A DNA stretch of 64,000 nt, taken from NCBI GenBank assembly GCA_965235115.1, contig OZ249438.1, forward strand, positions 39,494,001-39,558,000. Reading direction: 5' to 3'. Below, one piece after another: positions 15,937 through 19,873 of this stretch. The DNA comes from Laetmonice hystrix. Lineage: Eukaryota. Position numbers and translations under genes: made by a program. Positions within the stretch are counted from its first letter, which is position 1; the number at the start of each line of letters is the position of its first letter. The notes below the pieces were generated by a model. The model was not told the DNA's origin. It ran no database searches and saw nothing but the letters and a program-made list of their open reading frames with translations.

Positions 15937-16831
15937 TAAAGCAAGGGAAAATACTGCACTCTGATTGGTTGAAAATGCTTGCAAATTGCAAATAAGGTCG
16001 TCGGCCAGCAGCAACATAAGGCAACATAACGACATATATCATCTTCGTTCATTTTTTCTCTTTCATTACATTGTCCGTCTTTTTGCATCGATTGATTGTC
16101 TAATAATATAATATTATGATTTTCTTTAAGATACTTTGTTGTGCATACTGGTATTATTAACACAGTAGAGACCACCTGGCCCTGATTTGCACGCTCCTCG
16201 ATAACATATGGTCAGGGAGGTGCTATTGGGTAAAAGTTACCATCTATAACCCGTCAATATATATAGCCGCAGTATCCGCGCCGGTCACCTTGGTAGGTCA
16301 CTTGTTGAACAACTCTGGACGATATGAACGGTGGTACAGACAAGAACCCAGCCCTACATGCGGCAGAACGTTTAGGATGGCAGGCAGGAGCCATCCAAGG
16401 TTTGCTGACGTGTGATGTCTGCGAGGTTGCCGGGAGATGGCGTCTTGTTGTGAAACCAGCCAGGTCTGGACACCCCCAGCCAATTTACAGCGGCCGACAC
16501 GTGTGAATCTGCCGGCGTGTATATTGTATGAGATGCCAGCCCCTCTCATATCCCATGAGATGACACAGCTACTCTGTCTACAGACTCGCCTTTCACACAC
16601 CATGAGCTAGACACGCTCACTGCTTGTCGACTTAGGCTTATTCTTTGTGGCTTTGTTACCAAAGCAGGTCTGATTTCCCAAGGCTGGGTTATGGATACCC
16701 GAGGAGGATACCCGATGTAAATAATTATAACACGCCCTCCCACCCATTTCTGTAAATCAGTGATTAGCTTTAGTTTACATAATATTATCTTTTCTTAAAG
16801 GGGCACGCCTTTCAGCATGGGTTCAGCATGT

Positions 16832-19279
16832 GGTCGATTCTCATGAGTCGTCGTCATTTGGGAATTTTGGCTTCTAGACCAAATAAATCGTCAGCAATAC
16901 CATATATGTGTATTGTTATTCTCTAATCCGATCAAACTCGTCGAGATCTTCAAAGGGATATATACTTTGCCCTACCTGTGGCCAATAATAAAAATGTTAT
17001 GATCAAAAAACCACCCAAATATGGCACTTTTTTGCCAAAAGAACAACAAAATCAACTAAGTTCCTATGAATACAAAATAATAGAAAGGTTGTGTGGGTAT
17101 TTCTTGTTATTTTTATATTGAGGAGGCATCACCGATATGTTCTATGCGAATTATTAATATTATATAGCAATATGTATCTTTGTCAGTGACCACAATCTTT
17201 GGTATATCTCAGCCGTAGAAACGAGAAACGCCCAAACAAGGCTTTGATATTATTAATTAAAAATAACATAATAGGGCAGTAATATTGTGTAGCATAAAGA
17301 GTAATACCTCTACCTATATGAGCATAAAGAAATAAGAGCCAGGTCCTCACACACTGGACAGCAGTAGGGATAACATGTCACAAAGTCAGTTTGGGGAACT
17401 TTTAGCATAGATACGAGAAACGCCCAACTTTATAGGGTATTTACGATACCTATTATATTTAACTATTTTCTTTATAGGATTAAATAACCGTGCCAAAAAC
17501 GGAAATATATATTAGTATATCAAGAATTATTGCTGGGTTGTATAAGCGCTGAGAGGCTAAAACCATTGGCATAGATGCGAGAAACGCCGTAGAAACGAGA
17601 AACGCCCAGTGGCCAGTTTAGGAATTAAAGGCATAGGGGGGCCACAATTGCCATCGAGTGAGGATGGGTTGAAACAACCGTGCACAACCTCGCCAGTGGA
17701 TGACGACATGGCCAGAGCCAGAAGTACAAACTCGGTCAGAATTTTGAATTTATGGCAGAATATGATAAATCAAAGATACTTCGTTAGAACTATGTAGGCC
17801 TAATATTAACTTTATAGACTCCTGTGGCACAAGCGGTAATGGTATTTAAGTGATTTTTTAAACAAAGAACCGACCACTAACGTCCCAGCATCGTCCAGTC
17901 CAGCGTACGTCATGCCTTTGGGTCAAGTACATTTGATATTTTACCGTCGTATAGATCTGTTCAAAGTGGGCGTTTCACGTTTCTATGGTCTCCTATCCAT
18001 ATAGTTACATGATGTATATAAGGTGTGTTCAGTCACAGAGCGAGTATGAAAGTAAAGGATAAGGGTAGTGATGATGATGTGCCATTATCAGAGCTGTTCC
18101 CAATTAAAACCATGCAAGAGACAAAGCAAGAGGCGCATCAAGAGGAAGGCCAGGAGATGCATGGGATTCAAGAAGCAGAGACAGATAGACACCAATAGGA
18201 GCAGGAAGGGACAGACCAGAAGATGAAGGATAAAGAGGCAGACACAGACCAAGGCGATGATGACACCTTGAACAAGGATGACATAATTATGTCTATACCT
18301 TTTAACACAGTTGCAAAAAGATTTAATGTTTGGATCATGAAGAACTGTATTACAACAGCGTAGAGTCTATATGGGTAGAAACGAGAAACGCCTTATTTAT
18401 AGAGAATAAAACGTACAGAATGATTAAGATCTCCATTTTCTTTGACTGCAGTAGGGTGATAATGTAGAAATATCTATTTTGACAAAATAAGGAATTATCT
18501 GAAGTCTTGAGCTGAATTTAGGAAGGAACACCGCCTTTTCCTTATATCTTGAACAAGATATGACGGGACAGCAAGAGATATATGACCCAAAAGAAAGAAT
18601 AATGTGTTGATTACATCATTTCATACAATAATAGATGATACATATAGGTTAATCATGACGTAGTAGTTACACGGAAATTCATAGGTTCTACAATCCCTGT
18701 ATTATAGCCGTCGGCGTAGATACGAGAAACGCCCTTACCATCGTCTACTATACAAAACCTATAAGATATTGTCTCACCATCCTTCAAGCATTGTAAATAT
18801 ATGCTCTTACAAAAGGCATATCTATATCTAGGACTGGTATATCTTCTATATTGAAGGAACTACCTTATTTGATAAGAAGAGATGTAGAGAATATCATGGG
18901 ACACAGGTATATGAACAATTTTCATCACCTCAGATATATATAAAAAGTATATGACTTCAAGATAAAAATATATAAAACAGGTGCAGTAGGTCCCATGTAT
19001 TAGGAAAAGCAAAAAAGAAGTATAAGAACCGGATTATTTTTCCTCACGACTCGGGTTAATCTATGGAGATATAGGGCGTTTCTCGTTTCTATGAGGGTAC
19101 CAGACAACACTATTTTGGCCCTGTTGCCATTCAAAGACTTTTCATATTTAACCTACCCGGCGTTACCTGCATATGCCCCACCCCCTCTAGTATATGTACG
19201 CAAAAGGATTTAATTATAGTCCCAAATTTTTTTAACTGCCCCTCCCAGGTCAAATGACGACGACTCGTGAGAATCGACC
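16832..19279. mobile_element. Unclassified non-autonomous TIR DNA transposon (2,448 bp) with 8 internal 18-bp motifs
   Basis: 29-bp TIRs GGTCGATTCTCA(T/C)GAGTCGTCGTCATTTG at 16832-16860 and 19251-19279 (1 mismatch); ATGT on both flanks (16828-31, 19280-83). Confidence 0.85.
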
Positions 19280-19345
19280 ATGTTCGCATTTTCAATTTGT
19301 GATGGGGCACTGCGGTATAACAAAAGAACCCACGCCCAGAGTGTA

Positions 19346-19873
19346 AATAGACTGTGGCCTCAAGGTAAAACTAGAGGTGGTTAAGATAGGAGAATAGACT
19401 GTGGCCTCAAGGTAAAACTAGAGGTGGTTAAGATAGGAGAATAGACTGTGGCCTCAAGGTAAAACTAGAGGTGGTTAAGATATGATAATAGACTGTGGCC
19501 TCAAGGTAAAACTAGAGGTGGTTGAGATAGGAGAATAGACTGTGGCCTCAAGGTAAAACTAGAGGTGGCTAAGATAGGAGAATAGACTGTCGCTTCAAGG
19601 TAAAACTAGAGGTGGTTGAGATAGGAGAATAGACTGTGGCCTCAAGGTAAAACTAGAGGTGGCTAAGATAGGAGAATAGACTGTGGCCTCAAGGTAAAAC
19701 TAGAGGTGGTTAAGATAGGAGAATAGACTGTGGCCTCAAGGTAAAACTAGAGGTGGTTAAGATATGATATTAGACTGTGGCCTCAAGGTAAAACTAGAGG
19801 TGGTTGAGATAGGAGAATAGACTGTGGCCTCAAGGTAAAACTAGAGGTGGTTAAGATAGGAGAATAGACTGTC
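19346..19873. repeat. 47-bp minisatellite, ~11 copies
   Basis: aatagactgtggcctcaaggtaaaactagaggtggttaagataggag at 19346 and 19393. Confidence 0.95.

What the first reader, a model, noticed from the sequence alone, without database searches (positions are those of the whole stretch)
16832..19279. 2.45-kb TIR element studded with eight dispersed copies of an 18-bp motif TAGAWACGAGAAACGCCC
Seen: 29-bp TIRs with ATGT duplicated (an alternative reading is TIR starting TGG with a TG duplication). The motif occurs at 17216, 17408, 17572 and 17590 (tandem), 18376 and 18717 on +, and at 17968 and 19074 on -. The copies are far better conserved than the unrelated AT-rich segments between them, and I saw none outside the element. 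Spacings of 192, 182, 378, 408, 341 and 357 nt are loosely 1x or 2x of ~180-200. Inference: the motifs could be transposase-binding sites spread through the whole interior (usually these are subterminal), recombination or capture sites separating cargo modules, or host-factor/nucleosome-phasing sites. I cannot assign the termini to a known superfamily.
Basis: partly seen in the sequence, partly recalled or inferred. Interest (0 to 1): 0.7.

Follow-up and report, generated by a model that had tools for sequence, protein, structure and literature searches.

The report
Non-autonomous Sola2-like transposon with binding-site array
This is a recently mobile, protein-less DNA transposon whose eight 18-base motifs are most likely docking sites for its transposase, inherited from the two arms of a larger parent element; a tidy example of a known kind of mobile DNA, not a new kind of system.

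Summary
Window 16832-19279 is a 2448-bp element with 29-bp terminal inverted repeats (TIRs) and a 4-bp target-site duplication (ATGT). It holds eight copies of TAGAWACGAGAAACGCCC; 0.07 are expected by chance. The genome has 12 full copies (mean 98.5% identical), each with AT-rich 4-bp duplications. The source sample also carries the precise empty site, so this insertion is polymorphic and recent.

Related elements explain the motifs. Autonomous relatives of 6.9 and 12.2 kb share the outer TIR and encode one roughly 700-aa transposase. It has no Pfam match, three invariant aspartates in an RNase H-like core, and Sola2-like motifs. These relatives carry nine 18-mers at nearly the same offsets and orientations: six in the left arm and three in the right.

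Each family has its own 18-mer sequence. Spacers between sites have diverged almost to saturation, yet their lengths differ by only 1-3 bp. Within this family the sites vary about four times less than the rest (p=0.003).

So the element is a deletion derivative made of the two fused arms, and the motifs are best read as family-specific transposase-binding sites. The recombination or cargo-module reading is not supported. No matching autonomous partner was found, and binding is untested.

The parts
16828..16831 (.). left copy of the 4-bp target-site duplication (ATGT)
   Evidence: The same 4 bases flank the right end. Twelve other copies have their own 4-bp duplications. A contig from the source sample joins 16826 to 19279, skipping 2452 bp, which is the element plus one duplication.
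16832..16860 (+). left terminal inverted repeat, GGTCGATTCTCATGAGTCGTCGTCATTTG
   Evidence: The first 15 bp are shared with families B, C and D.
16861..17080 (+). conserved subterminal block, about 60% identical between families
   Evidence: Element positions 30-250 align between families A-D with z 9.6-13.3, whereas later spacers give z 2-6. BLAST matches cover positions 93-219.
17216..17233 (+). 18-mer site 1 (element position 385)
   Evidence: The homologous sites lie at 383, 386 and 386 in families B, C and D.
17408..17425 (+). 18-mer site 2 (position 577)
   Evidence: The homologous sites lie at 574, 577 and 576 in B, C and D.
17448..17463 (+). second short conserved motif (ATATTTAAC core), left arm
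   Evidence: It repeats at 19137-19152 (D5). GATATTTAACT is invariant in the A/B/C left-arm alignment. Its function is unknown.
17572..17607 (+). 18-mer sites 3 and 4, a head-to-tail pair (positions 741 and 759)
   Evidence: The same 18-bp tandem pair is present in B, C and D, and also in family E with a different motif.
17968..17985 (-). 18-mer site 5, inverted (positions 1137-1154)
   Evidence: The homologous inverted sites are at 1120-1137 in C and 1519-1536 in D; D also carries a nested 394-bp insertion.
18070..18132 (+). relic of the 3' end of the transposase gene (encodes DDDVPLSELFP...)
   Evidence: tblastn against residues 691-711 of the family-D transposase gives 48% identity, E 0.006 in a two-sequence search. 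This is weak, but the position is right for a deletion derivative.
18376..18393 (+). 18-mer site 7 (right arm, 904 bp from the right end)
   Evidence: The homologous sites lie 914, 930 and 936 bp from the right end in B, C and D.
18717..18734 (+). 18-mer site 8 (563 bp from the right end)
   Evidence: The homologous sites lie 576, 561 and 564 bp from the right end in B, C and D.
19074..19091 (-). 18-mer site 9, inverted (188 bp from the right end)
   Evidence: The homologous sites lie 190, 187 and 186 bp from the right end in B, C and D.
19137..19152 (+). second short motif (ATATTTAAC core), right arm
   Evidence: D5.
19251..19279 (-). right terminal inverted repeat
19280..19283 (.). right copy of the target-site duplication (ATGT)

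Best explanation
Window 16832-19279 is one copy of a young, non-autonomous cut-and-paste DNA transposon, called family A here. It belongs to a Sola2-like lineage: 29-bp TIR, 4-bp AT-rich target duplication, and a DDD transposase supplied in trans. It arose by internal deletion of an autonomous element, keeping only the left arm (five sites) and the right arm (three sites). The 18-20-bp motifs are inferred to be family-specific binding sites for the transposase's N-terminal DNA-binding region. Several transposase molecules would load along both arms, mark the two ends as different (six sites against three, in fixed orientations), and help pair the ends before the RNase H-like domain cuts at the TIRs and inserts with a 4-bp stagger. 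Shown here: the anatomy, the copies, the target duplications, the polymorphic empty site, the conserved site map in five families, the family-specific motif sequences, the reduced variation in sites, and the transposase fold and invariant aspartates. Inferred: that the transposase is what binds the motifs, and that site spacing matters.
For: 1. Mobility. There are 12 full copies 97.7-99.7% identical to each other, plus fragments. Every full copy has a 4-bp duplication. A precise empty-site contig occurs in the source sample at flank depth, and element depth is about 13 times flank depth.
2. Autonomous relatives. L051 2597-9510 is a 6914-bp element with TSD ATAT and one 711-aa open frame. C3:1046785-1058954 is 12.2 kb with a 684-aa open frame. 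Both share the first 15 TIR bases.
3. Same site map. Sites lie at +385, +577, +741/+759 and -1137 (plus -1499 in C and D) on the left, and at about 930, 562 and 188 bp from the right end, in families A, B, C and D. Family E has the right-arm layout with an unrelated motif.
4. Family-specific motifs. A is TAGAAACGAGAAACGCCC, B is TAGAAACGCGTAACTCCC, C is TAGACGCGTCTCATTCCC and D is TAGACGTRCRTCATTCCC. Each is uniform across the 8-9 sites of its family.
5. Spacers. They are only 50-57% identical (z 2-6), yet their lengths are 174/173/173/172, 146/148/147, 355/353/356/356 and 158/160/157/156.
6. Selection within family A. Only 3 of 144 site columns vary against 199 of 2304 elsewhere (Fisher p=0.0027), and 1 of 58 TIR columns varies. 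An old A-like copy shows decayed sites.
7. Transposase. D417, D501 and D542 are invariant in 13 homologues. They sit at the end of strand 411-416, the end of strand 495-501 and just before helix 544-557 of the model. The core 394-580 matches integrase and Mos1 catalytic cores at Z 8.6-10.3.
8. A relic of the transposase C-terminal tail lies at the deletion junction.
Against: No experiment or binding data exist for any Sola element that I could find. No autonomous element carrying the A-type (or B-type) motif was found in this assembly. The protein that recognises A's sites is therefore unidentified, and covariation between protein and motif could not be tested for A. The spacing of 165-380 bp over more than 1 kb is much wider than in classic subterminal site clusters. 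The Sola2 assignment rests on the target duplication and on motif matches judged by eye, not on a profile comparison. The protein search of the genome scored only 65 of 4132 candidate loci.
Confidence: 0.72

Rival explanations
1. The motifs bind a host factor rather than the transposase, for example a transcription factor, an insulator or chromatin protein, or a nucleosome-positioning protein. They would set expression or chromatin accessibility of the element, and the roughly 185-bp spacing would reflect a phased nucleosome array.
For: Spacings are about 1x or 2x of 165-192 bp, and spacer lengths are conserved to 1-3 bp despite near-saturated divergence. The A motif contains GAAANNGAAAC, which resembles an interferon-regulatory-factor type site; this resemblance is from my own knowledge and was not tested.
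Against: Each transposon family has a different motif at the same positions. A host protein would not change specificity family by family. Sites lie downstream of the gene as well as upstream, and they persist under selection in copies that have no gene to regulate.
Confidence: 0.1
2. The motifs bind a second element-encoded product, such as a splice variant or a regulator analogous to TnpA of En/Spm, rather than the catalytic transposase itself.
For: In CACTA elements the subterminal repeats are bound by a separate protein (my knowledge). The autonomous elements have about 1.4 kb of unassigned sequence between the left arm and the open frame.
Against: Only one long open frame is present in the intact 6.9-kb element. 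No second conserved coding region was seen. Spliced genes were not searched.
Confidence: 0.08
3. The motifs are functionless relics of an ancient internal duplication or decayed tandem repeat.
For: Dispersed repeats with roughly regular spacing can arise that way. One pair is an exact 18-bp tandem.
Against: The spacers are unrelated to each other. The sites are kept in five families while the rest diverged to about 50% identity. Sites vary four times less than flanks within family A. Concerted, family-specific sequence change across all sites is not expected of relics.
Confidence: 0.05
4. The motifs are site-specific recombination or capture sites that separate exchangeable cargo modules, as in integrons.
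For: The sites occur in both orientations and bound segments with unlike sequence.
Against: All 12 full copies are collinear over positions 1-2448. Variants of the sister family are simple deletions with breakpoints away from motifs, plus one 1.45-kb insertion. The spacers are homologous between families position by position. No recombinase is encoded; the only open frame is a DDD transposase.
Confidence: 0.03

Closest known systems
Sola2 DNA transposons (Sola superfamily; Bao et al. 2009 as cited in PMC4455052; Bao and Jurka 2013, PMC3627910)
   Same: 4-bp AT-rich target duplications (AWWT, ATAT in PMC3627910; ATAT, TTAT, GTAT, ATGT here). TIR-bounded elements of 7-15 kb with deletion derivatives. 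A transposase without a Pfam model (PMC5751038). The three catalytic motifs resemble the two Sola2 transposases printed in that paper's supplement: MDFKEN / WSDGAKHFKS / YHGKSDVD against VDYSENW / SDSPSSQYRN / GHGKGPCDG here. By my count the aspartate spacings are about 87 and 43 residues there, against 84 and 41 here.
   Different: No profile or pairwise alignment to reference Sola1, Sola2 or Sola3 sequences could be run. I found no description of arrays of subterminal sites in Sola elements. The elements here carry no Fanzor gene.
Subterminal transposase-binding repeats of hAT, CACTA, P and pogo-like elements (Ac/Ds AAACGG hexamers, En/Spm 12-bp motifs, Hermes subterminal repeats; Lemi1/Emigrant, PMC1636448)
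   Same: Short motifs repeated in both orientations inside both ends. They are retained in non-autonomous derivatives, arranged asymmetrically between the ends, and specific to the element family.
   Different: Those clusters are dense, with many sites within about 100-300 bp of the ends (my knowledge). Here the sites are 18-20 bp long and 165-380 bp apart, and they reach 1.5 kb into the left arm and 0.93 kb into the right. Their positions are conserved to a few bp across families whose spacers have diverged to near saturation.
IR/DR ends of Sleeping Beauty-type Tc1 elements
   Same: Transposase sites sit at fixed distances inside each end (outer and inner sites roughly 165 bp apart, my knowledge), and the spacing itself is conserved.
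   Different: That is a different superfamily with a TA duplication. It has only two sites per end, within long inverted repeats. Here the arms are not inverted repeats of each other beyond the first 29 bp.

Membership tests
Cut-and-paste (TIR) DNA transposon | Terminal inverted repeats flanked by a target-site duplication of fixed length, in several copies at unrelated loci | tested here: met
   29-bp TIR. The 4-bp duplication is intact at 11 of 12 full copies; L003 shows GTAT/GTAC.
Cut-and-paste (TIR) DNA transposon | Presence/absence polymorphism with a precise empty site | tested here: met
   A contig in all three runs of the source sample skips 16826 to 19279 (2452 bp, the element plus one duplication) at flank depth. 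All runs come from one sample, so this is not independent population evidence.
Non-autonomous deletion derivative | Shares ends and subterminal regions with a coding element but lacks the gene | tested here: inconclusive
   The element shares the TIR core, the site map and a C-terminal relic with autonomous families C and D. No autonomous element with the A-type motif was found.
Sola2 (Sola superfamily) | 4-bp, AT-rich target-site duplication | tested here: met
   ATAT x5, GTAT x3, TTAT/ATAA x3, ATGT/ACAT x2, against AWWT/ATAT in PMC3627910.
Sola2 (Sola superfamily) | DDD catalytic triad in an RNase H-like fold | tested here: met
   D417, D501 and D542 are invariant. Their placement in the model is canonical. 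The core matches integrase and Mos1 at Z 8.6-10.3, rmsd 2.5-4.2 A over 128-166 residues. This rests on a model, not a solved structure.
Sola2 (Sola superfamily) | Significant sequence similarity to reference Sola2 transposases, and better than to Sola1 or Sola3 | tested here: inconclusive
   Only a by-eye match of the three catalytic motifs and their spacing to Sola2_DFa-2 and Sola2_PPa-1. No alignment statistics, and no Sola1 or Sola3 references were available.
Transposase-binding subterminal repeats | The motif is bound by the element's transposase and is needed for transposition | not testable with these tools
   Supported only indirectly, by conservation, family specificity and position.
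Integron-like or site-specific recombination cassette system | Modules gained, lost, inverted or permuted at the repeated sites, with a recombinase encoded | tested here: not met
   Copies are collinear. Breakpoints lie away from motifs. The only open frame is a DDD transposase.

The most novel reading that the evidence does not exclude
The arms of this transposon lineage form a spacing-constrained scaffold. Nine transposase sites are held at fixed distances of roughly one or two nucleosome-repeat lengths (165-192 and 340-380 bp) for as long as it took the spacers to diverge to about 50% identity. Meanwhile the site sequence and the transposase's DNA-binding specificity co-evolved, splitting the lineage into mutually incompatible families. 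That would imply a large transposition complex, possibly templated on chromatin, and not described for any eukaryotic DDE/D transposon. It would also make Sola2 a natural system for studying how transposon families become reproductively isolated from each other.
Probability: 0.2. Interest if true: 0.65.

Novelty: new member of a known kind. Interest (0 to 1): 0.4.

Why it matters
Sola elements are among the least studied eukaryotic DNA transposons, and I found no binding-site or biochemical data for them. This locus and its relatives provide three things:
- an apparently intact autonomous element;
- young non-autonomous families, one still polymorphic in the sequenced animal;
- a ready-made map of nine candidate transposase sites whose sequence differs between families while their positions stay fixed.

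That makes end recognition, family specificity and cross-mobilisation in Sola2 directly testable. For genome annotation the result is ordinary: this is a transposon insertion, reportedly inside a long intron. It is not a regulatory array or a recombination system.

Tried and rejected
- **Alternative boundary (TIR starting TGG with a TG duplication).** Rejected, because copies with TTAT or GTAT flanks do not fit it.
- **Known RNA families.** None at E up to 0.1 in 16500-19700.
- **Transposase family and structure by sequence.** Pfam finds nothing at E up to 10 beyond noise. No sequence match to any solved structure. Foldseek against the PDB gives only weak RNase H-like hits. The Atlas lead to DUF7869 and ISAzo13 was not confirmed by hmmscan.
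- **12.6-kb and 14-kb pairs of family-B TIRs as candidate autonomous elements.** The first is a solo end plus a standard 2.46-kb copy. Neither contains a transposase match.
- **A 5.4-kb A-like element at C8:26670874-26676132 (82-86% identical ends).** No transposase similarity in the parts held, and its sites are decayed. The middle 1.6 kb was not retrievable.
- **Flanks of 18 further transposase loci, for a wider motif-protein table.** I did not work around it.
- **Reference Sola papers.** Bao et al. 2009 and Yuan and Wessler 2011 are not held. The machine-read Sola2 alignment supplement is unusable.
- **Formal alignment to the Sola2 sequences printed in a supplement.** Left out, because they have no reference id.

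Full report
**Observation.** A pattern search finds eight copies of TAGAWACGAGAAACGCCC, at 17216, 17408, 17572, 17590, 18376 and 18717 on + and 17968 and 19074 on -. None lies elsewhere in the 64-kb window; 0.07 are expected, and 0 of 100 shuffles reach eight. The arms 16831-16860 and 19251-19280 are 97% complementary. The segments between motifs do not resemble one another. No Rfam family matches.

**It is a mobile-element family.** The window lies in a 627-Mb eukaryotic assembly of 35 contigs. The genome holds 12 full-length copies that are collinear over positions 1-2448, plus fragments and copies interrupted by other insertions. The full copies are 97.7-99.7% identical to each other, mean 98.5%.

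Every full copy ends in GGTCG...CGACC and is flanked by a 4-bp duplication. In element orientation the duplications are ATAT five times, then GTAT, TTAT/ATAA and ATGT/ACAT.

Contigs of the source sample's own sequencing runs include one that joins 16826 to 19279. It skips 2452 bp, exactly the element plus one duplication, with five ambiguous letters (CATGT), and it has flank depth. The element itself has about 13 times flank depth. The unoccupied allele is therefore present beside the occupied one. The insertion is polymorphic and the family moved recently. All three runs come from one sample, so this is a single observation.

**Relatives explain the motifs.** Searching the genome for the TIR with mismatches reveals sister families that share the first 15 bases, GGTCGATTCTCAYGA.
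- **Family B** is about 2.46 kb and non-autonomous. It can be aligned to family A by BLAST only in the TIRs, in positions 93-219 and weakly in the last ~130 bp. Yet it has eight copies of a different 18-mer, TAGAAACGCGTAACTCCC, at 383, 574, 740, 758, 931, 1545, 1883 and 2251-2268 (inverted).
- **Family C** has 2.0-kb non-autonomous copies and a 12.2-kb copy (C3:1046785-1058954) with a 684-aa open frame.
- **Family D** has 3.3-kb copies that keep the N-terminal third of the gene, and an intact-looking 6914-bp element (L051 2597-9510). That element has TSD ATAT, a single 711-aa open frame and a nested 394-bp foldback insertion.

In the two autonomous elements the family's own 18-mer (C: TAGACGCGTCTCATTCCC; D: TAGACGTRCRTCATTCCC) occupies the same map. 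On the left the sites are at +386, +577, +742, +760, -1137 and -1499. The gene follows. On the right the sites lie about 930 and 562 bp from the right end, with an inverted one about 187 bp from it.

Family A has +385, +577, +741, +759 and -1137-1154, then 904, 563 and 188 bp from the right end. Family E has a 774-aa open frame 41% identical to D's. It shows the right-arm layout with an unrelated motif, CACGTACGGTTACACG.

Family A is the left arm (five of six sites) fused to the right arm (three sites). At the junction, 18070-18132 still encodes DDDVPLSELFP, which resembles the acidic C-terminal tail of the D transposase. The match is weak: E 0.006 in a two-sequence search.

**The protein.** The open frame has at least 72 matches in this genome at 26-100% identity, and only 65 of 4132 candidates were scored. 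A library of 1.84 billion representatives holds 12,016 relatives at E up to 0.001. None of those tested has a Pfam domain. No solved structure matches by sequence.

Thirteen homologues share invariant D417 (in QxDY[AS]EN), D501 (in SDSPSSQYRN) and D542 (in GHGKGxCDGVGG). In the AlphaFold model (mean pLDDT 69, core 80-94) these lie at the end of strand 411-416, at the end of strand 495-501, and just before helix 544-557. Those are the canonical positions of an RNase H-like triad. Residues 394-580 align with retroviral integrase and Mos1/SETMAR catalytic cores at Z 8.6-10.3.

A 4-bp AT-rich duplication (AWWT, ATAT) is the stated hallmark of Sola2 elements (PMC3627910). The two Sola2 transposases printed in that paper's supplement show the same three motifs (MDFKEN, WSDGAKHFKS, YHGKSDVD) with aspartate spacings of about 87 and 43 residues, against 84 and 41 here. 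I did not run a formal alignment, because those sequences have no reference id and I did not type them. Sola2 is therefore the probable label, not a proven one.

**What the 18-mers do.** Five lines of evidence point to family-specific binding sites for the transposase.
1. The sites lie in both arms of coding elements and are kept in derivatives that have lost the gene.
2. Each family has its own version, uniform across its 8-9 sites. The versions share the frame TAGA-N11-CCC, with a CpG-rich and often palindromic core (GACGCGTC in C, GACGTACGTC in D). A host factor would not change specificity from one family to the next.
3. Position and orientation are conserved while spacers have diverged to 50-57% gapped identity (z 2-6 against shuffles). 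Spacer lengths are 174/173/173/172, 146/148/147, 355/353/356/356 and 158/160/157/156. More internal intervals vary by 12-34 bp (alignment).
4. Among the 12 copies of family A only 3 of 144 site columns vary, against 199 of 2304 elsewhere (p=0.0027), even though each site holds two CpGs. Only 1 of 58 TIR columns varies. An older A-like copy has sites decayed at the CpGs.
5. Nothing suggests recombination at the sites. Copies are collinear. Family-B variants are deletions with breakpoints at 249/644 and 899/2337, plus one 1.45-kb insertion.

The likely mechanism is inferred from what is known of hAT, CACTA, P and Tc1 elements. Several transposase molecules bind along the arms. The unequal arrays (six sites against three, in fixed orientations) distinguish the left end from the right. 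Bound protein helps pair the ends. The DDD domain then cuts at the TIRs and integrates with a 4-bp stagger at ATAT-like targets.

**Open points.** No autonomous element with A-type or B-type 18-mers exists in this assembly. My tally of known A copies accounts for about 116 of the 117 A-motif hits, and all 100 listed places lie in those copies; all 52 exact B-motif hits lie in B-type non-autonomous copies, none next to a transposase match. Either the partner is absent from this individual or assembly, or another family's transposase moves A through the shared outer TIR. The selection seen on A's own sites argues mildly against the second option.

Site spacing is far wider than in classic subterminal clusters, and it approximates one or two nucleosome-repeat lengths. 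The length conservation suggests that spacing matters, but I have no neutral indel expectation and no chromatin data.

I therefore could not tabulate motifs for the other transposase lineages or read the middle of a 5.4-kb A-like element on contig 8.

**Verdict.** The element is a new family of a known kind, a non-autonomous and probably Sola2 cut-and-paste transposon. Its motifs are best read as transposase-binding sites inherited from the two arms of the parent element. The exotic cargo-module reading is not supported. What is worth keeping is the nine-site map, conserved in position but specific in sequence to each family, in a superfamily with no biochemistry, together with an apparently intact autonomous relative with which to test it.

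Noticed in passing
window 19346-19872: A 47-bp tandem repeat, 11.2 copies at 95% match, starts 67 bp to the right of the element. It is not part of the transposon, since other copies have different flanks.
   Followed up: partly
window 17448-17463 and 19137-19152: A second short motif with core ATATTTAAC occurs once in each arm. GATATTTAACT is invariant between families A, B and C at the same left-arm position. It may be a second protein-binding site.
   Followed up: partly
window 17357-17378, 18444-18465, about 18981: GCAGTAGG-containing 20-22-mers recur three times inside the element (D4). Conservation in other families was not checked.
   Followed up: no
L051 3256-3649: A 394-bp foldback or MITE-like insertion with 34-bp inverted ends sits between sites 2 and 3 of the autonomous family-D element. 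It shifts the later left-arm sites by about 394 bp.
   Followed up: partly
L051 5527-5790 and 8039-8463: The autonomous element has a 59-65-bp tandem repeat (4 copies) just upstream of the transposase open frame, and a 112-121-bp repeat (3-4 copies) just downstream. These may be promoter or terminator region repeats.
   Followed up: no
L031 about 1226-2678 (family B copy, G000:C5:35627170-35630872): A 1.45-kb insertion replaces site 3 of the tandem site pair in one family-B copy. Its identity was not examined.
   Followed up: no
G000 genome-wide (one search list): The transposase family is very diverse in this genome, at 26-61% identity and open frames of 440-945 aa, many without stops. Several near-identical 883-aa and 899-aa copies suggest other currently active lineages.
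   Followed up: no
L052 (G000:C2:39101843-39112037): The family-E element is about 10.2 kb with a 774-aa open frame. Several homologues (P0003, P0004, P0005) carry an extra conserved C-terminal domain, with motif GxxVxxxYGxxWYxAxV and a W-KWG motif, that families C and D lack.
   Followed up: no
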